A DNA stretch of 64,000 bases from Mobula hypostoma (lineage: Eukaryota): assembly GCF_963921235.1 (NCBI RefSeq), contig NC_086124.1, positions 27,900,001-27,964,000 on the forward strand, written 5' to 3'. The translations under genes were made by a program, and so were the position numbers. Numbering within the stretch: the stretch's first letter is position 1; each line of letters opens with the position of its first letter. Below the pieces are notes generated by a model, which did not search any database, was not told where the DNA came from, and saw nothing but the letters and a program-made list of their open reading frames with translations. This document shows, in pieces, positions 2,161-63,154 of this stretch.

Positions 2161-2442
2161 CCCAAACTGCATGCAGCTTGTCAGGGACGCTCAAATGCTT
2201 GATTTCACAAGTGTAAGTGTCACCCTTCCCGGGGTCAATTTCGACCTGTAGCCGGACTTGGAACGTCCCATCCTGGTTGGGTAAAATTTTCGTCATTAGC
2301 ACTTCCCGATTGATCACTACACCATTCCGCAGCCACGTTGCGTGGATTTTCTTGGGATAAAATCCATGCACTTGGCATATCAGGGCCAAGGTATTCTCTC
2401 TGTTCTTCAGGTGTCTTGAGGTTATTGTGATAGTTGGCTTCG
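2161..2442 (-). CDS. WB: MHC W-category beta-chain-like gene, Ig C1-set (beta2) exon
   Basis: Acceptor ctgcag|CG at 2442 and donor TGG G|gtaag at 2161; 282 bp, phase 1/1. Translation: (A)KPTITITSRHLKNRENTLALICQVHGFYPKKIHATWLRNGVVINREVLMTKILPNQDGTFQVRLQVEIDPGKGDTYTCEIKHLSVPDKLHAVW. It has the C1-set LxCxVxGFYP, W and YTCxxxH motifs. LPNQDGTFQ is class I alpha3-like (P235/G239), not the class II beta NGDWTFQ. Confidence 0.85.
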
Positions 2443-2958
2443 CTGCAGTGGACAGAAACACATTGAAGCTGAACTTGGTTACAGGATCAGAAAAAGTAAA
2501 GAGTAACAGAATTTCAAAGTTCAAAGTATGTTTACTATTAAAGCATGTGTATATCATACAACCTTGAGATTACAGCATGACGAAATGGAGGAACAGACAC
2601 AATGGGTCGAATGGTCTAATTCTGTTCCTATGTTTATTCACCTCCCTAGATGCTGCCTGGCCTACTTAATGGTGCGCGCGCGCGTGCGCGTGTGTGTGCA
2701 TGCACGTGCATACACACGTTGCTTTGGATTGCCACCATCTGCCGAATCTTCTGTGTTTAGAAACTGTCCCCCGGTCATCTGCCTCTGACCAGGGGTAGGG
2801 TTCTTTCTGTCACTCCCAGGTCACATGAAAGTTTCAAGAACTGTTGGTAACCCAAAGTTTCCATAAGGTGGAAATACTTAGAAATAAAAATTTGCATGGT
2901 GAGGTTAATTAGCTACAGGTTAGTGCAGATCAGAATCAGGTCTAATATCACTGACATA

Positions 2959-3428
2959 CACTCAGTGTCCACTTTATTAGGTACACCTGCTCATTAATAT
3001 AAACCTCTTATCAGCCAATCATGTTCCAGCAACTCAATGCATAAAAGCATGCAGACGTTGTCAAGAGGTTCAGCTGTTGTTCAGACCAAACATCAGAATG
3101 GGGAAGAAATGCAATCTAATTAACTTTGACCATGGACCAGATGGGGTGGTCTGAGTATCTCAGAAACTGCTGATCTCCTGGGATTTTCATACACAACGGT
3201 CTCTAGAATTCACAGAGAACGGTGCGACAAAGAAAAAACATCCAATGAGCGGCAGTTTTGTGGGTGAAAGCACCTTGTTAATGAGAGAGGTCAGAGGAGG
3301 ATGGCCAGACTGGTTCAATCTGACAGGACGAGGATAGTAACTCAAATCACCATGTGTTACAGCAGTGGTGTGCAGAAGAGCATCTCTGAATGTACAACAT
3401 GTCACACCTCAAAGTGATTGAGCTACAG
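2959..3428 (+). mobile_element. Tc1-derived MITE, truncated by the Buster insertion
   Basis: TA then cactcagtgtccactttattaggtacacc terminus, followed by degenerate Tc1 transposase N-terminal sequence. Confidence 0.7.
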
Positions 3429-5745
3429 CAGTGATTCCCAAGGGGAGTGCGGTATTGTATGATGTCATGGGGGAGGGCAGTAAATGGCACCCCCTTACTT
3501 GAGGCTTGAGACCTGACCGACCGTTAGTAGAGCAGGCACTTCCGACAAAAAGGATGAGGCACTGGAACACAGGAAGAACCACAGCTCAGCGGGCGGTGAG
3601 CACTTGTCCTCACAACAAGTCTGAAATTTGACAATCTCGTCCAACTTTACCAACCAAACAGACATTATTGAGGATGCGTAAGTTAGCAAACAGGGTGTCC
3701 AACAGTTACCCTTGACTTGCAGCATGGAACGAGTTCGTGCAATTTAACAGTTGATAGGTCAAGTACACCCTCTCAACCTTCGTGACAGATCTATGGAAAA
3801 CAGGTCGCGTAACGATACAGCGCTGGTCGGAACCAAATGGTGAAATAGAGTCAATCAGTGAACCTGTCAACACCGAGGAATCCTGTTGAGGTGTTCAAAG
3901 TGACCTCAGCTTCATATGTGCGGTCAAGAACCATCTTTGGGGATTACCAGACATTACGTGACTGGTCAATCGTGCTAACTGGAATAGTAAGAAGATGGCT
4001 TCCCAAACACAAGTTCTGTCCCGACTAACATTTGATTCCAATCTGAATCCTTGTCAATGTAATTTTTGCAGTTGTGATCGTCTTCATCTTTGCCTCGCTG
4101 TTCCTTTGCGTGCCGCTGCCATCGTTCCATCCGTGTCAACTCACTGCCGTCAACATCCGATAGGCATTCCCAGTGGTGTTAATTTATTATTTTAATTTAG
4201 CCCCGTTAACAATGGGTAAGTATGTACGGTGCGATCTCTACAAGCTTGAAGGCGGTGAAGCCTTGAATTCTAATCCTGCTAAGAAACAGAAACTACACAA
4301 AGTGTGCCAATACAAAGTTACGTACCTGAAATATGGTTTTATTCCATCCCATTAGATCAGCAGCGCCCCATGTTTCCTATTTGTAATACTGTACTGTCTA
4401 ATGAATCCATGAAACCATCAAGATTGCAGGAACGCTTCTGCAAAAGACACCCTGAAAAGGCTACTTATGGTATTACTCGGTTCCAGAAGATGAAAGAAGC
4501 ATTGGAAAACCATTGCACACTCGAGTCATTTGCCAAGAAATGACCTTGCTGGTGATCTCATTGCTTCTTATATCATTTCCAAAATGATAGCAAGGTGTGG
4601 AAAATCTCATACTATTGGTGAAAGATTAATAATGCCTGCTGTATCAGAAGTGCTCACCCCTGTTCTGAAAATGGAAACCAGTATTTTAAAATCAATTCCT
4701 CTGAGCAATAGCTCATAGTATTGATGAAATGAGTGAAGATAAGGAATATCAACTGTGCACAGAGCCACAAAAAACAGAATTTGGGATTCAACTGGATGAG
4801 TCAACAGTGTAAGGTAATGCGGCATTGCTAAAGTCATATGTACAGTTTATCAAAAAGGGAAAAAGCGATTCTCTTTTGTAAAAAGTTAAAAACATATCAA
4901 CAGAGAAACAATCTATGATGAGCTCAAAATGTATATTGAAGATGAAAATATTTCAATTAGGAACATGATTTCTTGTACAAGAGATGGAGCACCATAAATG
5001 ACAGGTTGCCATGCCGGTTTAGTGACATTAATGAAAAAAGAAATTCCAAGTCTGTTTGCAATCCATTGTGTTATTCATCATCGATACCTTGCAGCCAAAA
5101 ACCTCAGCTCGTGACCTTTTTCAAGCATGACTCTTGTAATACCTGCTATCAACAAAATTAAAGCTCATCCATTAAATAGCAGAATATTTCACCATTTATG
5201 CCAAGATAACAATGCAGAGGTTGAACGCTTGCTTCTTCACACTGAAATGTGTTGGCTGTCAAAAGGCTGCTGCTTAAAACATTTCTTTGATCTTTTTGAC
5301 ACTGGTGGAAGTCAACAAGATTGAACTTCTATATGAAGATGTGGTAAACAAAGCCAATCTGTATGACAAACTGAACATTCTAAATACGAAACTGCAGCGT
5401 GAAAACCAATTTAATCCAGGCAAAAAGCGCAGTGCCCACTTTTATCAGAAAATTGGAAATATGTAAGCAAAACATTGGGAGAAGAATGTTCTCAGTTTCC
5501 CTGCATGAGAAGTATGGCACTCTCTTTCACAGATGGTGATTTGCAAGAGTGCTCCTTACACCTGCAGTCACCAAAGAAAGATTTTCAGAATTGATTCAAG
5601 GATTTGAACGATCCAGAAATTTTGGACTGGATAATTAGCCCATTCCTTTGCAAGGTGGAAGAACAGAAAGAGGGCTTGCAAGAAGAAATTACCAAAATTC
5701 AGAATAAGGGAGAAGCAAAAGTGCTTATTTAAAAATGTCCATTTT
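3429..5745 (+). mobile_element. hAT Buster/Charlie-type DNA transposon, decayed SCAND3/ZBED5-like transposase
   Basis: 5' terminus cagtgattcccaa is preceded by agcTAcag (nnnTAnnn Buster target pattern). Frameshifted ORF pieces: YLKYGFIP, VLSNESMKPSRL, HTIGERLIMPA, INKIKAHPLNSRIF...LLLHTEMCWLSKG. Cut on the right by the L1. Confidence 0.85.
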
Positions 5746-5746
5746 G

Positions 5747-8700
5747 GGACTTCGGGGTTGAGCATGGAGTGACTGGGTGCGTGTGAGTGTGGCTCCCGAG
5801 TTTTATTGAAAATCTACCTGCTTATCTTTACCGTTTTCTCGAGATAACTGAATATTTAACATTGTGAACCCCGGGACGTTGCTGGACACTGAAATGGGAA
5901 ATAAAATGTACCTTCGAAGTAAAACTGGGGAAACAGATAGTGAAGCCTCGAGCAAGAAAGCTGATGTTACAGTAATGGTGCTGTTGCACGTTGCTGGACC
6001 TGGACCTGCACTGCCCGATGACTTGGAGAGGCTTTGTTTAGTACTTCTTACTGACATGATGCAAGTGGTGCATTCTGTCCTAAAAAGAGAACTTGAAGAT
6101 GCTTTGTCACCAGTGAATGCTACCATGGAACAAATTATGTCTGCTTATGAGTCACACGACGAACGCATTCCTGAGTGATTACAGTGACCGACTGGTGAGC
6201 GCCGAAGCCGCCATTGCAGCGTTGCAGAGCGAAAACGCGTTTCTGAAGGGAAAGCTAGATGACCTCAAAAATCGGTTGCGGAGATCCAATTTGAGAGTGG
6301 TTGGCATTCCTGAAAATTTGGAAGGTTCGGACTCTGTTAAACTTATGACCGAGTTTTTTGACGAAGTGCTGGGGACAAATTTCTTCCCAAGGCCTCTTGT
6401 GCTTTTGTGTGCTCACCAAGTTGGGCCTAAACCATCCAGTGTCTCTGAAGCTAAGCAAACGAGACCAAGAACGTTCCCGGTTCTCTTTCACTTCTTTAAG
6501 ATAAGCAATGCATCAACAGACGGAAGCAGGAGCTGTATTTCCGCGGACATCGCGTGTTTTTTTTAATGAAGATTTTAGTGCGGAGTTGGGGAAAAAACGA
6601 GCAGCTTTTGAGGAGGTGAAATCCCTGCTTTACAGGAAAGGGGTCAGGTTTGGCCTCTTGTATCCTGCCCAGCTCCAGGTCATGCGTGAAGGTAAAAAGC
6701 ATTATTTCGATACACCAGAGGCGGCCAAAGAGTTTTAACATTTGCGCTGGGGAGAAGAAGAACGAGAAAAGCAATGACTTTTTTTTTGGGTTATTCATGC
6801 AGTATTGAAGGGGCCTCCTGCCGAGGCAAACTGTTAATTTTCGCAATCCACTTCTTTGTTCATTTTTTCCAGTTTAATTTGTGGAACACGATCGGGTCAA
6901 ACTGCTGTGCTGCCAAAACTGATTAACAAAAACTTTTAACCAGCAAAATGTAAATATTTGGGATTTGTATCTCTGGTGTTTAGTTTCCTAGTTTTTTTTA
7001 AATGGTTTGCTTGACCTGTGTTATCTTTAGCCTATATATATTACAGGTAGAATAAGTAATCGTATAAATTTTAAGGAGGGGAGCCACCCTGGATTAGATT
7101 GAAAGTTTGGTTGTATGGGGAACGCTTTGGAAGTGTTTTGTTTGGTACTGCCTGTGATCATCCTCAGTTGGGGAGGTCGATCTAGTTTTCGGGGGTTAAT
7201 TGGGTTTTTTTGTTGTTTGTGTAAAGGGGTGGGGGGAGTGTTTTGGGGTATTTCCATGGTAGCTTATTATTTTGTGTGTTACGGATTGGCCAGACTTTCT
7301 TTTCATTGTGCGTTATTGTGTGCAGCTTGTGCCCTTGCACTGTTTTGGATTGTAGGCCCTGTGTGTCTTTTGATATGGTTAACATGAGTGCTGATGATGG
7401 AGGCCACCCTGTGAGGTTTATTTCTTGGAATGTAAAGGGGCTCAATGGTCCTGTTAAAAGAGCTAAAGTTTTCTCTCATCTCAAACAATTAAAAGCAGAT
7501 ATACCATTTCTACAAGAGTCACATTTAAAAGTGTAAGACCATAATAGACTTTGTAAAGCGTGGATTAGTCAGGTTTTTCATTCCAGATTTAATAGTAGGT
7601 CCAGGGGGGTGGCAATATTAATCACCAAAAGAATGTAGTTTACACCATCTGATGTAATCAGTGACCTTAATGGTCGCTTTATTATAGTCTCTGGATCTCT
7701 CTTTCAGATACCTGCCATTTTGGTAAATGTTTATGCCCCTAATTGGGATGACGTCCACTTTGCAAATAAGGTTTTGTCATTAATACCTAACCTGAATACA
7801 CACCGGCTAATCTTTTCAGGAGATTTGAATTGTGCTATGACCCACTGCTTGATAGGTCTAGCTCTAGGGAAACATTTTCTGGTATGGCAAAGGCCATCTC
7901 GATGTTTATGCAACAAAATGGTTTTGTGGATCCTTGGAGATTTTTGAATCCATCATTCTCTTTCTTTTCTCATGTTCAACACTCCTATTCCAGGCTAGAC
8001 TATTTCTTTATAGATAGCTCCTTGATACCAATGATTAGACAAATTGAGTATACTGCTATAGTTATATCTGATCACTCGCCCATGAAACTGGACCTATGTT
8101 TTCCTTTAAACATTAGAGAACGGCCTCTGTGGAGACCCCTTTTGCTTTCCAATGAGAAATTTTGTAGTTATATCGGCTAACATTGACACATTTTTCGAGA
8201 CCAACAAAACTGAGTTGATATCGTACTCTTTACTTTGGGAAACTTTAAAAGCTTTCTTGAGGGGTCAAATAATATCTTATACTTCACATGCCAATAAAGA
8301 GCGTAGGAAGGAAATGCAAGTGTTATTGCAATCTATTTTGAACTTGGATAGGCAATATTCCGAGGCACCCACTGCAGAATTATATAAAAGCTGGGCTGAT
8401 TTGCAAGTGAAGTTTAATCTTCTCTCTACAAACCAATCAGAACAATTAATTCTTAAGGCACGTGGCCTCTAATATAGTGACAAGGTGAGCCGGCTTATGG
8501 CTCATCAGTTGAAGCGTCAAGCTGCATCACGACTTATTCCCCAGATAAGAGACACGCACCAAAACTTGACAAGCAATCCAAAAGAGATTAATAACATCTT
8601 TTGCAACTTTTTATTCCTCTCTGTATGCCTCAGAGTTCCCCTCAGGTATAACAAATATGGAACATTTTTTTAGTTAATTTGGAAATACCAACTCTGGAAC

Positions 8701-10790
8701 CAGAGGAGGTGGAGAATTTAGATCGGGCTCTTGGGTAGGAAGAGATTAATAATGCCATTATGCCTATGCAGAGTGGTAAATCCCCAGATCCTGATGATGA
8801 TCTGATATAATTTTATAAGAAATTTAAGGTAAGCTCATACCGGTCCTTCTAGAAGTGTTTCAGGAATCTTTGGAGAATTGTTCCTTACCCCCTACTCTTT
8901 CACAGGCATCTATTTCACTTCTTCTTAAGAAGGACAAGGACCCGACTCAATGTGGATCATATCACCCCATCTCACTTTTGAATGTGGATGTGAAAATTTT
9001 GGATAAAGTGCTTGCATGTCGTTTAGAACATCCCCTTCCCAAGATAATCTCAGATGATCAAACAGGTTTTATTAAAAATTGCCATTCTTTTTTTAATATC
9101 CCTGGACTGGCTGATGTGGTTTATTCACCCAGTGATTCTCCAAGTCTGGAGGTTGTTATCTCCTTGGATGCGGAGAAGACATTTGATAGAGTGGAGTGGG
9201 TATACTTGTTTAGTGTTTTGGAGAAATTTGGATTTGGCAGAATATTTGTAGCCTGGGTTAAGCTATGATATCACTTGCCTTTAGTGTGTATACAGACAAA
9301 TTATTTTCGATCTGACTATTTCCCATTAACATGTGGCACTCACCAAGGCTGTCCATTGTCCCCTCCTCTTTTTGCAATTGCAATTGAGCCTCTTTCTATT
9401 GCACTTAAGTCAACAACATTATTTCAAGGTGTTAGGAGAGGCGACATAGAACACCGTGTATCCCTATATGCTGATGACCTCTTACTTTATGTTAGCGACC
9501 CTGCAGGTAGCTGTCCTGCTATTGTGTCATTATTAGGCCAATTTGGAGCCTTCTCTGGCTATAAACTGAACCTTCAAAAAAGCAAATGATTTCCCATTAA
9601 TAACTTGGCCCTACAGATCTGACAGGAATCCTTGCCTTTTCCTTTATCTCAAGATGGTTTTGTATACCTATGAATACATGTTACTCGCTCTTTTACATCT
9701 CTGTCTGAAGCTAACTACAGGCCTCAGGTTGGCCAAATGAAGGCTGATTTTGAGAGATGGCAGTTTACCCCTTACTATAGCTGGGAGAATTCAATCAGTG
9801 AAAATGACTATACTTTCCAGATTTCTTTATTTGTTCCAGTGCTTACCAGTTTTCTTATCTAAGTTATTTTTCAAATCAATCGACCAAGCTATAATCTCTT
9901 TTATTTGGGAAAATAAGGTCCCAAAGGTTAATAAGTGCACTCTCCAAAGAGGTCATGACGTAGGTGGAATGGGCCTTCCTAGCTTTGTTCATTATTATTG
10001 GGCATCGAACATTCAAAAAGTATTATTTTGGCTTCACCGGCCAGATATAATCTGGTGCCTGCTTGAGTCACGGTCTTGCCACTCCTCGTCTCTCCCAGCT
10101 TTGGTGTATTCTTCCTTACCATTGAAATCCTCTCAATTCACATCTAACTCGGTCGTGCTCTCCACCCTCAAAATTTTTAATCAATTTTGCTTCACTGTAA
10201 GTTCACATCAGCTTCAGTTTTGGGTCCCATTCATAGAAACCATCTATTTCTTCCCTCCACACTCGATTCATTTTTTAGACAATGGGGTTTGAACTGTCTT
10301 ATGCGCATTAAGGATTTGTACACTGATAACATATTGATAGTTTCGATAACCTGTGCAGTAAATATGGCCTTCTGCATAATCATTTTTTAAAACACCTGCA
10401 GATTCACCACTTTGTCAGGGAAAAATGTCCCTCTTTTCCTGATCTACCACTTGCTATGTTGTGGGGAAAAACTCACTCATAGCTTTAATAATAAAGGGCT
10501 GATCTCTGTACTATACTCTCAGCTGATGTCTTTGGGAGTTCAAGATCTAAACAAAACTAAAACTAGGTGGGAGGTTGATCTTGGTATGGATCTGGTTGAG
10601 GAATATTGGGCAAAAGCATTGAATAGGGTTCATTCCTCATCATCATGTGCTAGACTGGGGCTCATACAATTTAAAGTTTTACACAGGGTACATTTATGTA
10701 AAGCCAGCCTTGCTGACATATATCCTGGGACAGATGCTGGTTGTGACACATGGACTGTTCATAAATCTGATGGCAGAAGGGAAGAAACTT
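5747..10790 (+). mobile_element. Near full-length decayed L1-clade LINE (ORF1 ~5894-6738; ORF2 ~7384-10790)
   Basis: ORF1 pieces include DDLKNRLRRSNLRVVGIPE and FGLLYPAQL. ORF2 has the APE endonuclease ISWNVKGLNGPVKR, RT QGCPLSP and SLYADDLLLY, and a C-terminal QFKVLHR. Many stops and frameshifts. Confidence 0.9.
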
Positions 10791-10839
10791 TTCCTGAACC
10801 CTTGAGCGTATGCCTTCAGGCTCCTGTACCTCCTCCCTG

Positions 10840-11290
10840 AAGGTAGCACTGAGAAGAGGGCATGTCCTGTGTGGTGAGGGTCTTTGATGATGGATGATGC
10901 CTTTTTGAGGCATCACTCCTTGAAGATTCCTGAATGCTAAGGAGGCTCGTACCCATGATGGAACTGACTGAGTTCACAACTTTCTGCAGCTTCTTTCAAC
11001 CCTTTGCAGTATCTCCACCCCTCCCCCCATGTGCAGCCAGTTATACCTCTCCACGGTATATCTGTAGAAATTTGACATACCAAATCTCCTCAAACACGTA
11101 ATGAATATAGTCGCTGTCGTGCCTTTTTGTAACTGCCTCGACATGTAGGCCCCAGGATAGATCCTCAGAGACATTGATGTCTAATAACTTGAAATTGCTC
11201 ACTCACTCCACTTCTGATCCCTCTTTGAGGACTGGTGTGTGTGTTCCCTTGTTTTGCCCTCTCTGTCAGCCTCTGCCACACAGCCTACTT
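10840..11290 (-). mobile_element. Rex1/Babar-type LINE 3' fragment
   Basis: Reverse complement encodes the decayed IIKDPHHTGHALFSVLPSG-type terminus shared with the copies at 16.7, 35.4 and 50.3 kb. Confidence 0.6.
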
Positions 11291-11299
11291 GAACATCGC

Positions 11300-11812
11300 T
11301 TTGAAAACAAAACTTTAATTCCACTTCCCACTCCCATGCCATGGCCTCCTCTTCTGTCAGGATGAGGCCGCACTCAGGTTGGAGGAGTAACATCTTGTAT
11401 TCTGCCTGGGTAGCCTCCAACCTGTTTGCAGGACCACCGATTTCCCGAACTTCCAGTAATGCCCCCCTCCACTTCATCATTCCCCATTCCCTTTTCACTC
11501 TCTCACCTTACCTGCACATCACCTCCCTCTGGTGCTTCCCCCCTTTCTTTCTTCCATGCCCTTCTGTCCTCTCCTATCAGATTCCTCCTCCTCCAGCCCT
11601 GCACCTCTTTTCCCAATCAACTCCCCAGTTCCTTACTTCACCCCTCTCCACCTCCTAACTCTGACTCCTCAACTTGTTTCTCCAGTCCTGATGAAGGGTC
11701 TCAGCCCGAAACGTCGTCTCTACTCTTTTCCATAGATGCTGCCTGGCCTGCTGAGCTCCTCCAGCACTTCGTGTGTGCTGCTTGGATTTCCAGCATCTGC
11801 AGATTTTTTTGT
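11300..11812 (+). mobile_element. Penelope-like element 3' fragment (end of GIY-YIG region plus 3' terminal repeat)
   Basis: Homologous to 61100-61680 of the long Penelope copy (actcaggttggaggag, gggtagcctccaacctg, gatgctgcctggcctgctg). Confidence 0.75.
11683..11720 (+). ncRNA. Minimal type I hammerhead ribozyme motif with a damaged stem I
   Basis: cagtc CTGATGA agggtctcagccc GAAAC GTC gtctc. The catalytic core is intact; the 3' stem-I strand is mutated from gactg. Confidence 0.55.
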
Positions 11813-11826
11813 GAAAATAAACTTAC

Positions 11827-12084
11827 CCGTCAGAGCTTGAACAGCCTGGTGAACGATCTCCATGGCAAAAGGCATGTCATTAACATAGCGGGCAACATTT
11901 CTGATAAGCTTTTGATCGCGGTTCAGTTTGTCCACGAAAGACTTCACAAGTGGATTGATGGCCACAAACTTTCCTGTTGTATAATCAAAGCCAACAGCCA
12001 CTTCTCCATTGTAAGCAAACTGCAGGGTAGCCATTGAGAACTCCGAACCTTTACCAGAGAAAGTCACTTGACCGATGTGCATTC
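11827..12084 (-). CDS. WB: MHC W-category beta-chain-like gene, membrane-distal groove (beta1) exon
   Basis: Acceptor ccag|GA at 12084 and donor ACG G|gtaagt at 11827; 258 bp, phase 1/1. Translation: (G)MHIGQVTFSGKGSEFSMATLQFAYNGEVAVGFDYTTGKFVAINPLVKSFVDKLNRDQKLIRNVARYVNDMPFAMEIVHQAVQALT. GMHIGQ resembles class I alpha2 GSHTxQ, and QFAYNG resembles QYAYDG. Confidence 0.85.
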
Positions 12085-12219
12085 CTGGCAAGCGAATAAT
12101 AATAGATCCGTTAGCCATTTGTGAGAGTGAAATGGCTCATTTTAAAACCTTAAAATTAATCAAACTGAAAGAACAAATTTGTCTCTCCCTTCTGTGGAAA
12201 CCTCACCATTCTGACGGCA

Positions 12220-13220
12220 ACAGGTGCCACTCCTCCAGAACCACCTCTCCCTCCCACTGTAAAACTCCAATAGCTGGGATTTGGTGTTGGTACTGCTGAC
12301 CCTTCACCCTCACTCTCGGCACCCTCCTCTTCCCCAGTTCGATGCCCACGTCCCCACCCACCTCTTCGCCCAAACCCCTCCTCGCCATCGAATTGCCCTT
12401 CCCTCAACACCTCTCCCCACAGACATCTCTCCTCACCGTCCACACCCAACTCTCCACCCACCCCCTCTCTCCCTACCCACCCTCGGTGACTACTTCCCTC
12501 CCTCCGCAAACATCCTTGGCGGTCCCTCCCCACCCACTCACCCATAGCCCCCTCCCAATCTCAGTGCCCTGTATCCTCCCCACTCTCTGCACCCCCACAA
12601 CTCCACTCCTCAGCCCTCCGTCCCACCCTTAGCACCCCTCTCCCTCCCCACACACCTTTGGCACCCTAATTCCTTCCCCACACAACCATCCCCAGTGACC
12701 CCTCCTCTTCCACCACCCCCTCAACAATACTCAATCCACCTCCACTCCCTCCCTTCCTGCTTTCTCTCAGTGCATCCTTCCCTTCCCACGCCCGTTCTGT
12801 GCCCTCTCTCCTCTCCTTTGGAAGCCCCTCCTCTCCCATGGTGCCCACTCCAGTACTCTCCATTGGTGCCCCCTCCTCCCTACCTTCCCTTTGCACCCCC
12901 TTCCCACCCTCCTTTGGTGTTCACTCCCTACCCACCCTGCCTCAATGTCACTCCCCTCTCCTCCCCACCCTCCATCGGTACCCATTCCCCTCCCCTCCCC
13001 TCTTAACCCTCCCTCAGTTCCCCTCCCCACCCTCCCTTGGTGCTACTCTCTCCACCTTCCTTCAGCGAGGTCTCCCTTTCCCTCCTGACCTTTACCCTCC
13101 CCTCCCTCCCTCCCTAGTTGCCCTCTTCCCTCTCTTGCCCACCCTCCCTCAGTGTCCCCACCCCTCTCTACCTCCCTACGCTCCATCGGTGCCCCCTCCC
13201 ATCCCTGCTGCGCTGCGCTC
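12220..13220. repeat. ~1 kb C-rich low-complexity tract filling most of intron 1
   Basis: The plus strand is dominated by C and T runs, so it is G-rich on the gene's sense strand. It produces only spurious Pro-rich or Gly-rich ORFs. Confidence 0.85.
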
Positions 13221-13225
13221 CTCAC

Positions 13226-13370
13226 CCAGGGCAGTGGAGCCGTTGAGGAGGAGGAGGAAGGCGGCGAGCAGAGAGGGAGAGCGGCGTCGCCTCACGCCGG
13301 CCGGCGGCTCCTGAGACAGCGGGAGGAGCAGCTGGCTCACGGTTCGCGGAGACGGCATCATTCCCCACAT
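13226..13370 (-). CDS. WB: Leader (signal peptide) exon of the WB-like gene
   Basis: In-frame ATGs at 13370, 13361 and 13358. Translation: MWGMMPSPRTVSQLLLPLSQEPPAGVRRRRSPSLLAAFLLLLNGSTAL(G). The phase-1 donor CTG G|gtgag at 13226 joins in frame to the GA of the next exon. Lies in a CpG-rich segment. Confidence 0.8.
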
Positions 13371-13560
13371 CCCTTTCACCGAAGGCTGAGGACCTTGTCA
13401 CACAGCCTCTACGCGCGAAACCGATCGCCAGCCGGCAGGTCCCGTAACGGGAGGCGATCGATGTAGAAGTTTCCCCGGCTGAGTGGACGGCCGCTGCCAC
13501 AGACAGGCGGGGCGAGGCGGGAGAAACGCCTTCTGTTTCCACATGGCGCTTTATTCTCAA
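13230..13560 (-). promoter_or_regulatory. CpG island / probable promoter of the WB-like gene
   Basis: Locally dense CpG in an otherwise CpG-depleted window. It overlaps the leader exon and contains a GC box (ggcggggcg at ~13506). Confidence 0.6.
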
Positions 13561-13629
13561 CGAGACTCAACAACACTAGACGAAAGGTGATTGGGATACC
13601 AGCTGAGAGGAGCGTGGATTGGGGCGGGT

Positions 13630-13968
13630 AATAACAGGTGGGGGGGGGGTAGGTGTGTGAGTGGGACACCAGGTGAGGGGGGGGTAGGTGTGTGAGTGGG
13701 ACACCAGGTGAGGGGGGAGGTAGGTGTGTGGGTGGGACACCAGGTGAGGGAGAGGTAGGTGTTTGGGTGGGATACCAGCTGAGGGGAGGTGGTTCGGTTG
13801 GTGGGATGCCAGGTGAGAAGGGAGGTGGGTGGGTGTAATACCAGGCGAGGGGGAGGTGGAATGGGGGGAAAGCAGGTGAGGGGGAAGGTGGGTGGATGGG
13901 ATACCAGTTGTGCCATAAGGTGGGTGATAGGGGGGAGGAGTATACCAGGTGAGAGGGACGGTGTGTGT

Positions 13969-22890: not shown

Positions 22891-24039
22891 TCTGCCTGGG
22901 ATCTGACACCGGACAATGCAGATAGCCACGAGTGCTCGTCCCAACTGGCCTATTTCTGAAGATCATCGCCACGGTGTTGGAAAGAGTTTTGAGCTGCAGG
23001 ATGAAAATTATTTGTAGTTCCATGAACACCAGAGCAGCACATACAGTAGTTGTGATCGGTGCAGACTCTGGACCTCACCCCAAACTGCACAGTCTCTCCA
23101 GGACACCCCTGTGCTCCAGTTGAGAAGTGTAGGTGCCCCCCTGCTGGGGTCAACGCTGAACATGAAGTCTGAGTTGGAATGTGTCAGTTTGGCAAAAGGC
23201 TGCTCCTGAACATCTCCTGCTCGATGGCTTCGCCATTCCGCAGCCACGCTGTGTTGACGTCCCTTAGGTAAAGTCCATCCACTCTGTACATCAGGACTGA
23301 GGGCTTTACTCCCACGTTCAGCTGTGTTAACGTTATGGTGATGGAACGTTTCACTGCAGTGGAGAGAAACCATAAGACACAGGAGCAGAATTAGATCATA
23401 CGGCCCATCGAGTCTGCTCTGCCTTTCCATCATGGCTGATTCATTAACCCTCTCAACTCCATTCTCCTGTCTTCTTCCCGGAACCTTTGATGCCATTACT
23501 AATCAAGAACCTAACAACCTCCACTTTAAATATACCCAATGACTTGACCTTCACAGCTGTTTGTGACAATGAATTTCACAAATTCACCACCCTCTGGCTG
23601 AAGAAATTCCTCCTCATCTCTGTTCTAAAGGGACACACTTCCATTCTGATGCAGTGCCTCAGAATTACTGAGAATGCTCAGTACAGGAGATGGAATATCA
23701 TGTTATAGCATATTGGTAAGGTCACCTCCATAGTGCTGAGGCTATGAAGACTGCCCCAGCTTTTGTGCTCCATGCCCGCTAACATGATAAACTGATAAAC
23801 CAGACTTTGGGCTGCTCCAGGGTTCGGATCTGAGGATCATTTTGGTTTGGAATGCTGCTGTCTGCATGACCTCTTTTTGCTTTCTCTTGCACATTGATTG
23901 TTGTTTTTTTCTTTAATAAGGTTCTTTCAGATTCCTTGCTTTGTGGCCACCTGTGAGCAAGCAAATCTCAATGTTGTTTAATTTTTACATTCTTTGATAA
24001 CAAATGCACTTGAATCTTGAATCAATGTACAGTTCTGGT

Positions 24040-33266: not shown

Positions 33267-35389
33267 TATACCTGTATAATTGCTAAATCAAATGGTTGTC
33301 CTCTGAATCTAACAAGGAGCACTCTTTCTGATATTGCCCAATGTCCTAAATCACTTTTTAACCATGTTTTCATTCATAAGAATTCCTACTCCATTAGTAT
33401 GGGATGTTCCACAAGAATAAATTAGTGTTTTATTTCTATTCTGACATGTTCCAGCACCTATCCAATGAACTTTGCTAATTCTCATGTTGTTAATCTTTAG
33501 TCTTTCCATTTCACTTATCACATTGTCCAATCTTCCTGCTTGATATAGGGTTCTGACATTCCAAGTGGCAATAATTTTATTTTGCGTTACTTGAATTTTA
33601 TGAGCAGTAGCTTGATGACGGTCGGGGATCCCCTGCTGACCAGAATCAACCCTACCGAGCGAAGCATCTTAGACTTGTCTTGAAGATCCTCTTGACACTG
33701 TTGTTGTGTGATACATTTTGTGAGTTGGACCATGGTTTTCTTAGCAAATAGATTCTAGCAAACCTAGTATCTAGCAACAGTGGTTTGCTATTGCCTACCG
33801 TTGGGCGAACTAAAGAAATCGCCATTTCTCCTCCCAAATGTTCATCCACCTGTACTATAGCCATTGACATCTTCAACAATAAACCAAACATAAGCTGAAA
33901 ACAAGCAGCTCACACAGAAGAGCACAAAATGAAATACAAAACAGCATAACAGTAAAAAAATACGAACCAGGGCATTACATGTACATAAGGTGACTGACAG
34001 GAACAAGGCCTGTTCCCGAGCTGGGTGACTCTGATGGACAGCATAGTCATGATGGGCCACAGGGTCTGCTCCTATGCTGACTGACCTTATTGTGTCAGTG
34101 CACAGACGGTGGGGACACTGTCAGCCACACCCTATTCATCCTTGGTCATCCAGTACGGAGGGGCAGGGAGAAAGGCTGATGCCCCAGTTAATCTGCTCCT
34201 GGTAGCTGGGTAAGATAATTACCTGTGGGTTTTGGAGGTGGGTAGTGGAGGGTTCTGACCAAGCTGATTACCTGGCAATGTTTGAGGGAGAGGGGGATGC
34301 CCGTGCCTGGGCAGATGTGGAAAAATAACATGCACAGTGACGATGGGTAGTACAGAGGTACTTCGAGACCTTTGGGCACTCTGGGGGGTTGGGGCTAAAT
34401 TCTATCCTCGATGAGGATAGGAATGTGTTAGCTTAATCTGTATTAGTCATAATTTGCCCGTTTACGTTTGTAATGCAGTGTATCAGAGCACTGCAGTGGT
34501 TTGAATTGAGAATAAATGTAATTTTGTAAATAGACTGGTGGGGGCGCTGTTGTCAGCAATTTGCCTTGCATTTGTAGAGTTGGCTTCATAACTTCAACAT
34601 AACTTCCATGATGTTAATGATGTAGACAGCTCGGCGTTCAGGATCAGAACTTCCTTGGTACGGTTGACTTCAAAGACAGGGTTTGTGGTGGTTCAGGCCA
34701 CTGATAAAGTCTTCCAACAGTGGAATACGGGCCAGAAATTTCCTGACAGAGAAATCAAAATAGGTGATGTCTTTGCCAATGTAACCAAATCGCAGGCCCG
34801 TTTCTGAGAACCACAGAGCTGTGTAGGAGTCGACTGTCTTCCCTGATGAACACAATTGAGAAGAAGGATAGTTGAAGAGTCGTCTCAAGGGTAGGGTGTG
34901 TTGCGAATGAATTGCATGAAACATGGTGATTTCAATCTTCTGAGTTGCAGGTTCCACCTGACTATAAGTTACAATTTCAATCCATTTGCTCCCATGCTAG
35001 ACAACACACTTGTTAGACCACACTTACGTTGACTGTGTGACTATCAGAAATGGCTGAGAGTATTGGATACAACAAAGTTTACGGGAGCAGAAGCCACCCC
35101 AGCTGTAGTACTGTAGACCAGAGCTAGGCATGCCCCTAATGAATAGTGGGGAGAAGCAAAGGGATCTTGGGGCTCACACCCATAGATCGCTCATGTTTGG
35201 TAGGACGAGTTATCAGATCAGGTTTAATACCACTGGCATATGTCATGTAAATTGTTGATTTGTTGTTTTGTGGCAGCAGTACAATGCAATTATTGACATA
35301 TAAAACTATGAATCACAATAAGAAGGACATATAGAATTAAATAAGTAGTGCAAAAAGAGAGGGAAAATTTCTGAGGTGGTGTTCATGGG

Positions 35390-62928: not shown

Positions 62929-63004
62929 ATGGGTCGATATTGCACTGCCTGGGCGCTCCTCCTGCTCCTCGCCGCTCGTTTGGGGACTCGCAGCTCGGCG
63001 GCCG
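62929..63004 (+). CDS. Signal-peptide first exon of an unidentified secretory/membrane gene (candidate WA partner)
   Basis: Strong Kozak context gcaaccATGG. Translation MGRYCTAWALLLLLAARLGTRSSAA(G), with a phase-1 donor GCC G|gtgagt at 63004/63005. Confidence 0.75.
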
Positions 63005-63154
63005 GTGAGTCGATTCCTGTCGCGGGGATCACCGCGCTTGGTGCAGATTGTGGGATCCTGCACAGTTCGCATTGCTGGGGTCATCAACCGGGTCGGGGGT
63101 GGGGTGTTATGGGTTGGATCTTGTTGTTTAAGGGTTAAACTTCCTGGTAAGACC

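What the first reader, a model, noticed from the sequence alone, without database searches (positions are those of the whole stretch)
11827..12084. Groove domain has lost both canonical cysteines and the D122-equivalent
Seen: the 86-residue domain has no Cys. By eye, the class I alpha2 C101 position aligns to Gly (VTFSG), C164 aligns to Pro (RYVNDMP vs AYLEGTC), and D122 is Val (YNGEV). Neither extracellular domain contains an N-x-S/T sequon. Established: the alpha2/beta1 disulfide is conserved in nearly all class I and class II beta chains. Inference: a divergent, non-classical groove, possibly binding a non-peptide ligand or none. The exon is still stop-free with perfect splice sites among heavily decayed neighbours, which suggests purifying selection.
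Basis: partly seen in the sequence, partly recalled or inferred. Interest (0 to 1): 0.72.

Follow-up and report, generated by a model that had tools for sequence, protein, structure and literature searches.

The report
Cysteine-free W-category MHC beta1 exon
This exon encodes the outer domain of an expressed "W-category" MHC beta chain in a devil ray, and its missing disulfide bond is an old, already visible trait of that gene lineage in sharks and rays, not a new loss.

Summary
Window 11827-12084 (minus strand) is a 258-nt, phase-1 exon with AG/GT borders. Its 85-86 residues have no Cys, Gly at the class I C101 position, Val at the D122 position, and no N-x-S/T sequon.

It is exon 2 (beta1) of an annotated Mobula hypostoma gene (XP_062891132.1). 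RNA contigs from three samples splice it exactly to the leader exon and onward.

The gene is a W-category beta chain of the WB_DS1-like lineage (Okamura et al. 2021).

Every WB_DS1-like beta1 I could check lacks the helix cysteine, so none can form the disulfide. That covers seven species in the 2021 supplement and 16 database proteins from sharks, skates, sawfish and stingrays. The strand cysteine survives only in skates, bullhead sharks and dogfish. Gly at that site is shared by sawfish, stingrays and Mobula.

Only the loss of the acidic residue at the D122 position (E/D elsewhere; V/T/A in Mobula copies) is specific to Mobula.

The exon keeps all family-invariant residues and sits on a short branch, which argues for constraint.

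Verdict: a new member of a known kind, low interest. The scan has already noted other W-category copies in this genome.

The parts
11827..12084 (-). Exon 2: beta1 (membrane-distal, groove) domain of the W-category beta chain; 258 nt, phase 1; Cys-free, no sequon
   Evidence: Translation. Pfam MHC_II_beta 27.5 bits against a cutoff of 20.9. 100% match to P0001 residues 49-134. RNA contigs cover exactly 11827-12083 with 0 differences in two runs.
13226..13370 (-). Coding part of exon 1: start codon at 13370, 48 codons plus 1 nt of signal peptide, donor G|gtgagg. RNA contigs extend the 5'UTR up to about 13494
   Evidence: Sequence, spliced CDS check, RNA contigs 13225-13494 and the joint 12083->13225 in three runs.
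12085..13225 (-). Intron 1 (1141 nt, GT..AG)
   Evidence: The joint 'skips 1141, CT..AC' on the + strand appears in runs X5, X6 and X7. RNA depth in the intron is zero except one bin in X7, while the DNA run X8 covers it.
2161..2442 (-). Exon 3: beta2 Ig C1-set domain with the W/class I-type ILPNQDGTFQ (P57, G61) motif; acceptor ctgcag|CG, donor TGGG|gtaagg
   Evidence: Pfam C1-set 62.8 bits; sequence; tblastn 100% to P0001 residues 135-228; CDS check.
2443..11826 (-). Intron 2 (about 9.4 kb), filled with retrotransposon-type ORFs on the + strand. The 11500-11826 stretch next to the donor is a very high-copy repeat
   Evidence: ORF list with reverse-transcriptase-like ORFs at 7.2-10.8 kb; contig depths of 1e5-3e6 at 11701-11834.
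23000..23354 (-). Decayed WB beta2-like pseudo-exon (in-frame stop, frameshift, both Ig cysteines replaced)
   Evidence: tblastn with P0001, P0002 and P0005.
34682..34810 (-). Decayed WB beta1-like fragment (…RFGYIGKDITYFD…)
   Evidence: tblastn with P0001, E 2e-4.

Best explanation
The stretch is the beta1 exon of an intact, transcribed W-category MHC beta-chain gene (WB, DS1-like lineage) of the lesser devil ray Mobula hypostoma.

The chain has the class II beta layout: signal peptide, beta1, Ig-like beta2, connecting peptide, transmembrane and cytoplasmic parts.

By inference from the family (heterodimer formation was shown for salamander WA/WB), it pairs with a W-category alpha chain. In that pair, beta1 would supply four strands and one long helix to a class II-shaped groove platform.

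The strand-to-helix disulfide that class I alpha2 and class II beta1 domains carry is absent. The helix cysteine is missing from every shark and ray DS1-like sequence examined, so it was probably lost in the ancestor of the whole DS1-like lineage, before sharks and rays split. The leftover strand cysteine was later replaced several times. The change to Gly is shared by sawfish, stingrays and Mobula.

The domain is therefore a normal member of a disulfide-free lineage, held together by packing alone. It is most likely a non-polymorphic, non-classical molecule whose ligand, if any, is unknown.

Shown here: exon structure, splicing, transcription, family assignment, and the distribution of the cysteines. 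Inferred: pairing with WA, surface expression, and the absence of classical peptide binding.
For: Gene and expression:
- The three window exons splice to residues 1-228 of XP_062891132.1.
- RNA contigs in three samples join leader to beta1 at GT..AG, end exactly at 11827, and continue 220-233 nt into another exon. There is almost no intron coverage.

Family:
- Pfam MHC_II_beta and C1-set hits.
- The AlphaFold2 model has four strands, a helix and an Ig domain, and matches class II beta chains over about 185 columns.
- W/class I marks Q6, A32 and G35 in beta1, and P57 and G61 (not W61) in beta2.
- The beta1 profile hits class I with its first half and class II beta with its second half, as published for W-category.

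Cysteines:
- Published WB_DS1 sequences and 16 database beta1 domains all lack the helix Cys.
- The strand site is C in skates and Heterodontus (plus dogfish in the paper). It is G in Pristis, Hemitrygon, Hypanus and Mobula, and I, Y, F or V in other sharks.

Constraint:
- All 4 invariant and 6 near-invariant family positions are kept.
- This copy has the shortest branch among the Mobula 'long' copies (0.066).
- Its helix half is 70-72% identical to the stingray proteins, against 49-60% to its own Mobula paralogues.
Against: - The acidic residue at position 37 (D122-equivalent) is Val here. The 2021 paper counts it among the W/class I interface residues that contact the alpha-chain/beta2m Trp.
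- The mature chain has no N-glycan site.
- The only two well-supported exon differences seen in a second species' DNA are both nonsynonymous (G80R, D105N). One contig there carries a 1-nt deletion at 11948. Some relaxation of constraint therefore cannot be excluded.
- No dN/dS could be computed.
- The partner alpha chain was not examined. Only a candidate WA leader exon lies in the window, and no WA Ig exon was found there.
- The transmembrane and cytoplasmic exons lie outside the window.
Confidence: 0.85

Rival explanations
1. One reading: a lineage-specific loss of the disulfide and of D122 marks a newly specialised groove, for a non-peptide ligand or for no ligand, in this ray.
For: - Val at the D122-equivalent is specific to Mobula copies (V, T or A) while all other DS1-like sequences have E or D.
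- Mobula has several paralogues that differ mainly in the helix half of beta1 (49-60% identity there against 79-88% in the sheet half).
- The residues that classical class II beta chains use to hold peptide are not recognisable. For example, Leu aligns to W61 in the 'LN' motif.
Against: - The disulfide is missing from the entire DS1-like lineage in sharks and rays, including the published founding cDNA. It therefore says nothing special about this gene.
- Among the Mobula copies, this one has the helix closest to the stingray proteins (70-72% identity).
- Other W lineages (DS3, Nds5L) also lack the acidic residue at position 37.
Confidence: 0.08
2. An expressed but decaying copy: the gene is still transcribed and open, but constraint on beta1 is relaxed and it is on the way to the fate of its dead neighbours.
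For: - Dead WB exons lie upstream on the same strand, and the scan noted several dead W copies elsewhere in this genome.
- The conserved acidic residue 37 and all glycan sites are lost.
- The two best-supported exon differences in the second species are both nonsynonymous, and one contig has a 1-nt deletion.
Against: - All three exons are open and all four splice sites are canonical and used.
- Every invariant and near-invariant family position is retained.
- The branch is short.
- The exon shows about 2 listed differences in 258 nt, against at least 20 in 451 nt of intron 1 in the same foreign run. Not all differences were listed, and paralogues may cross-map.
Confidence: 0.07
3. A classical or DM/DO-type class II beta gene, as the database names ('class II histocompatibility antigen ... 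beta chain-like') suggest.
For: The Pfam MHC_II_beta hit, class II beta chains as best fold matches, and the NCBI product names.
Against: - Beta2 has G, not the W61 that is invariant in conventional class II beta chains, and it has the class I/W-type P57.
- There is no beta1 disulfide.
- The profile scores class I alpha2-alpha3 about as well as class II beta (92 against 105-109 bits).
- The nearest relatives are the published WB_DS1-like sequences.
Confidence: 0.01

Closest known systems
W-category MHC beta chain, WB_DS1 / WB_DS1-like lineage (Okamura, Dijkstra et al., PNAS 2021, PMC8713811): banded houndshark, blue shark, catshark, great white shark, bullhead shark, dogfish, little skate
   Same: - Exon layout, 85-residue beta1 with no gaps relative to the sharks, and no helix cysteine.
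- Q6, A32 and G35 in beta1, and the 'LN' motif in the helix.
- P57 and G61 in beta2.
- A glycine-rich transmembrane segment.
- 39% identity in beta1 and 54% in beta2 to the basking shark DS1-like protein that clusters with the great white shark one.
   Different: - Gly instead of C, F, Y or I at the strand-cysteine site. This state is shared with sawfish and stingrays.
- Val instead of E or D at position 37.
- No N-glycan sequon, whereas sharks have NYS/NYT in beta1 and NIT/NAT in beta2.
- A long 49-residue leader.
- Part of a Mobula cluster with several paralogues.
Stingray proteins XP_ entries P0012 (Hemitrygon akajei) and P0014 (Hypanus sabinus), likely orthologues
   Same: - 69-71% identity in beta1 and 82-85% in beta2.
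- Same FSGKG strand.
- Same ...VNDMPFAME.. helix.
- No Cys in beta1.
   Different: They keep Asp at position 37. Hypanus keeps an NYT sequon.
Classical MHC class II beta chains (e.g. HLA-DRB1, chicken BLB2) and class I alpha2-alpha3 (e.g. MR1, HLA-A2)
   Same: - Fold and domain order.
- The second half of beta1 aligns to class II beta and the first half to class I alpha2.
- Phase-1 exon structure.
   Different: - No C15-C79 / C101-C164 disulfide.
- G instead of W61 in beta2.
- No recognisable peptide-anchoring residues.
- No N19/N86-type glycan.

Membership tests
W-category beta chain (WB) | Class II beta-type architecture: separate leader, beta1 and beta2 exons, then connecting-peptide/transmembrane/cytoplasmic exons, with phase-1 introns | tested here: met
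   Exons at 13370-13226, 12084-11827 and 2442-2161 are all phase 1. Together they equal residues 1-228 of P0001, and the TM/CY part follows in the annotated protein.
W-category beta chain (WB) | Beta2 lacks the W61 that is invariant in conventional class II (mostly G61) and has P57 | tested here: met
   ILPNQDGTFQ gives P at position 57 and G at position 61. P is invariant across the two alignments; the D before G61 is invariant in A1.
W-category beta chain (WB) | Beta1 carries the W/class I-type interface residues Q6, A32, G35 and D37 | tested here: inconclusive
   Q6, A32 and G35 are present (MHIGQ, FAYNG). Position 37 is Val instead of D/E. Published DS3 and Nds5L WB also lack an acidic residue there, so D37 is not strictly defining.
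W-category beta chain (WB) | Closest relatives are published WB sequences rather than class I or class II | tested here: met
   An exhaustive HMMER search of 1.8 billion representatives found only 5 hits. Three are DS1-like proteins of a stingray and lamniform sharks (plus the gene's own product), and the fifth is an unrelated repeat protein. [quoted passage not shown]
W-category beta chain (WB) | Paired in the genome with a WA gene, and forms a heterodimer with it | not tested
   No WA Ig exon is in the window. A candidate WA leader exon at 62929-63010(+) and an expressed WA gene 34.5 kb beyond the window start are reported only in earlier scan notes. No WA sequence was available for a complex prediction.
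WB_DS1-like sublineage | 85-residue beta1 without the helix cysteine, and an 'LN' motif in the helix | tested here: met
   Aligns without gaps to the shark and skate DS1-like beta1 domains. N54 is invariant and L53 conserved. No helix Cys in any of the 16 sequences.
Conventional (classical or DM/DO) MHC class II beta chain | Invariant W61 in beta2 and the beta1 C15-C79 disulfide | tested here: not met
   G at position 61 and no Cys in beta1.

The most novel reading that the evidence does not exclude
Devil rays may have remodelled this molecule. Four observations point that way:
- All 'long' Mobula copies have lost the acidic residue that should bond to the alpha chain's signature tryptophan.
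- The copies differ mostly in the groove helix.
- One copy type carries a conserved Cys-Cys pair in that helix.
- Two leader-beta1-beta2 sets appear to share one set of membrane-anchor exons.

Together these could mean a mobulid-specific diversification of W-category ligand binding or chain pairing, possibly through alternative cassettes in one transcription unit.
Probability: 0.1. Interest if true: 0.5.

Novelty: new member of a known kind. Interest (0 to 1): 0.2.

Why it matters
[quoted passage not shown] Their ligands and function are unknown.

This report places one devil-ray gene firmly in the DS1-like lineage and shows it is expressed. It also states something the published alignments contain but that is not pointed out in the parts of the paper I read. 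The whole DS1-like lineage of sharks and rays has done without the groove-domain disulfide since before sharks and rays diverged, with the orphan strand cysteine replaced repeatedly.

That is useful background for anyone who wants to express or crystallise these proteins. It does not change the picture of the family.

Tried and rejected
Only one skate transcript (L001) was obtained, and it is too distant (38% identity in beta1) for a meaningful dS.
- WA partner. Regex and tblastn scans found no WA Ig exon in the window, and no WA protein id could be reached. For that reason complex prediction was not run and no binding claim is made from a model.
- AlphaFold2 monomer. Mean pLDDT was 62.7 (70-84 in the domain cores) with arbitrary domain orientation (rmsd about 14 Å to class II beta chains). 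I used it only for topology, not for groove geometry.
- Cross-species reads. The single read-laying run gave only a partial list of differences, and paralogues at about 90% identity can cross-map. The exon-versus-intron contrast and the 2 nonsynonymous to 0 synonymous count are therefore weak evidence.
- Pseudogene and classical class II readings were considered and rejected (see rival explanations).
- The supplement FASTA of the 2021 paper is machine-read from a PDF and contains letter errors. I cross-checked its cysteine states against Dataset S1 and against database proteins of the same or related species.
- Operators' notes. The window has no N runs.

Full report
**What is at the coordinates**

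On the minus strand, 12084->11827 is a 258-nt open exon. It is flanked by a polypyrimidine tract and AG acceptor (…attattcgcttgccag|GA) and a consensus donor (ACGG|gtaagt). It starts in phase 1.

The product runs (G)MHIGQVTFSGKGSEF…VHQAVQALT. It contains no cysteine and no N-x-S/T. Pfam places it in MHC_II_beta (27.5 bits, cutoff 20.9). The window contains no N runs.

**The gene**

An exhaustive HMMER search of 1.8 billion representative proteins returned only five hits. The first is a 100% match, P0001. This is XP_062891132.1 of Mobula hypostoma, named 'rano class II histocompatibility antigen, A beta chain-like isoform X4'.

Joining 13370-13226 (leader), 12084-11827 (beta1) and 2442-2161 (Ig C1-set beta2; Pfam 62.8 bits) reproduces P0001 residues 1-228 exactly. 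All introns are phase 1, as in MHC genes.

The connecting-peptide, transmembrane and cytoplasmic exons lie beyond the window start. The annotated gene spans 34.7 kb. Intron 2 is about 9.4 kb and is filled with retroelement ORFs.

**Expression**

I laid Logan contigs of three runs guessed to be RNA, from the same species, on 11500-13500.
- They cover the 5'UTR and leader (13225-13494) and exactly 11827-12083, and nothing in intron 1 apart from one bin in X7.
- They carry the joint 12083->13225 (CT..AC on the plus strand, which is GT..AG for the gene).
- They run on for 220-233 nt past 11827 into sequence that is not the adjacent intron.
- Two of the three contigs have no mismatch in the exon.

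A DNA run of a second species covers the intron as well. The exon is therefore transcribed and spliced at both borders.

**Family**

The 2021 description of the W-category (PMC8713811) lists the marks of the beta chain:
- a class II-type layout;
- Q6, A32, G35 and D37 in beta1;
- P57 in beta2, and G61 there instead of the W61 that is invariant in conventional class II.

This gene has H3, Q6, A32 and G35 (MHIGQ…FAYNG) and ILPNQDGTFQ (P57, G61). Position 37 is Val.

The non-batoid hits of the exhaustive search are basking shark and great white shark proteins. [quoted passage not shown]

A profile of the batoid and shark proteins scores class I alpha2-alpha3 (MR1, 92 bits) almost as high as class II beta chains (105-109 bits). 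A beta1-only profile hits class I with its first half and class II beta with its second half. This is the published mixed character.

The AlphaFold2 model has four strands, a long helix, an Ig domain and a TM helix. It matches class II beta chains over about 185 columns.

Veríssimo et al. 2023 (PMC10751288) already report W-type genes as multicopy, with conserved synteny, outside the MHC in the elasmobranch genomes they surveyed.

**The cysteines**

- The class I strand cysteine aligns to the G of FSGKG.
- The helix cysteine falls in a two-residue gap just before the M-P of VNDMP.
- D122 aligns to Val.

This state is not new. Published sequences (Dataset S1 and the supplement FASTA of the 2021 paper):
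- Banded houndshark WB_DS1 (the founding cDNA), blue shark, cloudy catshark and great white shark beta1 domains have no cysteine at all.
- Zebra bullhead shark and spiny dogfish keep only the strand cysteine.
- The partial little skate sequence has no helix cysteine.

I then collected database proteins from Mobula hypostoma and M. birostris, Hemitrygon, Hypanus, Pristis, Amblyraja, Rhinoraja, a skate transcript, Cetorhinus, Heptranchias, Heterodontus, two Scyliorhinus species, Mustelus and Stegostoma. I aligned their beta1 domains.
- None of the 16 has a cysteine at the helix site.
- The strand site is C in the three skates and in Heterodontus.
- It is G in Pristis, the two stingrays and Mobula.
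- It is I in Cetorhinus and Heptranchias, Y in Scyliorhinus, F in Mustelus and V in Stegostoma.

The simplest reading has two steps. The helix cysteine, and with it the disulfide, was lost in the common ancestor of the elasmobranch DS1-like lineage. The orphan strand cysteine was then replaced several times. The change to Gly predates the split of sawfish from stingrays and devil rays.

Other W lineages differ. Nds5L and the teleost WB keep both cysteines. DS3 keeps the strand cysteine and has its own extra one.

**What is specific to Mobula**

Position 37 is E or D in every DS1-like sequence outside Mobula. It is V in this gene, T in P0010, P0011 and P0015, and A in P0013. In class I the equivalent D122 hydrogen-bonds to Trp60 of beta2-microglobulin. 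The 2021 paper expects the WA tryptophan to sit there. I could not examine the Mobula WA chain.

The lack of any sequon in the mature chain is shared with the Hemitrygon protein P0012. It is not shared with the Mobula paralogue P0010, or with Hypanus or Pristis (all NYT in beta1), or with skates (NTT in beta2).

**Constraint**
- The exon keeps all four invariant positions (Q5, A23, G26, N54) and all six near-invariant positions of the family alignment.
- In maximum-likelihood trees it sits on the shortest terminal branch of the Mobula 'long' copies (0.066 for the ectodomain).
- Its helix half is 70-72% identical to the stingray proteins but only 49-60% identical to its own Mobula paralogues, while its sheet half is 79-88% identical to those paralogues. 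This copy has kept the old helix and the others have moved away.
- In the DNA run of a second species, the listed differences are two in the 258-nt exon against at least twenty in 451 nt of intron 1.
- Both exon differences are nonsynonymous (G80R, D105N). One contig shows a 1-nt deletion. The list was truncated, and paralogues may cross-map.

I take this as reasonable but not formal evidence for purifying selection. No dN/dS could be computed, because orthologous DNA was not retrievable.

**How it most likely works**

Shown: an expressed beta chain with an MHC beta1 and Ig beta2 ectodomain of the DS1-like W lineage.

Inferred from the family: it pairs with a WA chain, as shown for the salamander proteins, and reaches the cell surface. 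Its beta1 forms half of a class II-shaped platform.

The residues that classical class II beta chains use to hold the peptide backbone are not recognisable. For example, Leu aligns to W61. The 2021 paper finds W groups non-polymorphic and without complete peptide-binding sets. A non-classical role is therefore the best guess, and the ligand is unknown.

**Verdict**

This is a further, expressed member of a family described in 2021.

Earlier notes of this scan on the same genome list more W-category alpha and beta copies, several of them dead. I did not test those notes, beyond seeing the decayed WB exons and a signal-peptide-like ORF at the noted WA leader position in this window.

Noticed in passing
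outside the window (3' exons); proteins P0001 and P0010; gene models: This leader-beta1-beta2 set and a second one (P0010: beta1 74% and beta2 86% identical) have 63 of 63 identical connecting-peptide/TM/cytoplasmic residues. Two same-strand gene models end at the same coordinate, and one starts more than 10 kb upstream of this leader. Either two cassettes are spliced onto shared 3' exons, or the annotation has chained neighbouring copies.
   Followed up: partly
proteins P0010 (M. hypostoma) and P0011 (M. birostris), beta1 residues 65-66: These Mobula paralogues carry two adjacent cysteines in the beta1 helix (KYVTCCV), conserved between the two species. The site is about 5-6 residues before the canonical helix-cysteine site. 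No other DS1-like sequence has them.
   Followed up: no
window 23000-23354 (-) and 34682-34810 (-): Decayed WB exons lie upstream on the same strand. One is a beta2-like exon with a stop, a frameshift and both Ig cysteines replaced. The other is a beta1-like fragment with a GYIGKD motif that looks like a different W lineage.
   Followed up: partly
window 11500-11826: The part of intron 2 next to the beta1 donor is a very high-copy repeat. Summed contig depths are 1e5 to 3e6 in both RNA and DNA runs of two species, with many rearranged joints.
   Followed up: no
window 62929-63010 (+): An ORF here reads MGRYCTAWALLLLLAARLGTRSSA…, a signal-peptide-like start on the opposite strand about 49.6 kb upstream of this gene's leader. 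Earlier scan notes call it a candidate WA leader exon. No WA Ig exon follows within the window.
   Followed up: no
window 13495-13650 (-), upstream of the RNA-supported 5' end: Two CCAAT motifs (ccaatcc, ccaatcac) and a GAAACAGAAG element that resembles an interferon-response site lie within about 150 nt upstream of the furthest RNA contig end. Seen by eye only.
   Followed up: no
proteins P0016 (M. hypostoma) and P0005 (Hemitrygon akajei): Stingrays and Mobula share a second, older DS1-like sublineage with a 76-residue beta1 (9 residues shorter in the first strands) that keeps D/E at position 37 (100/100 support in the tree).
   Followed up: partly
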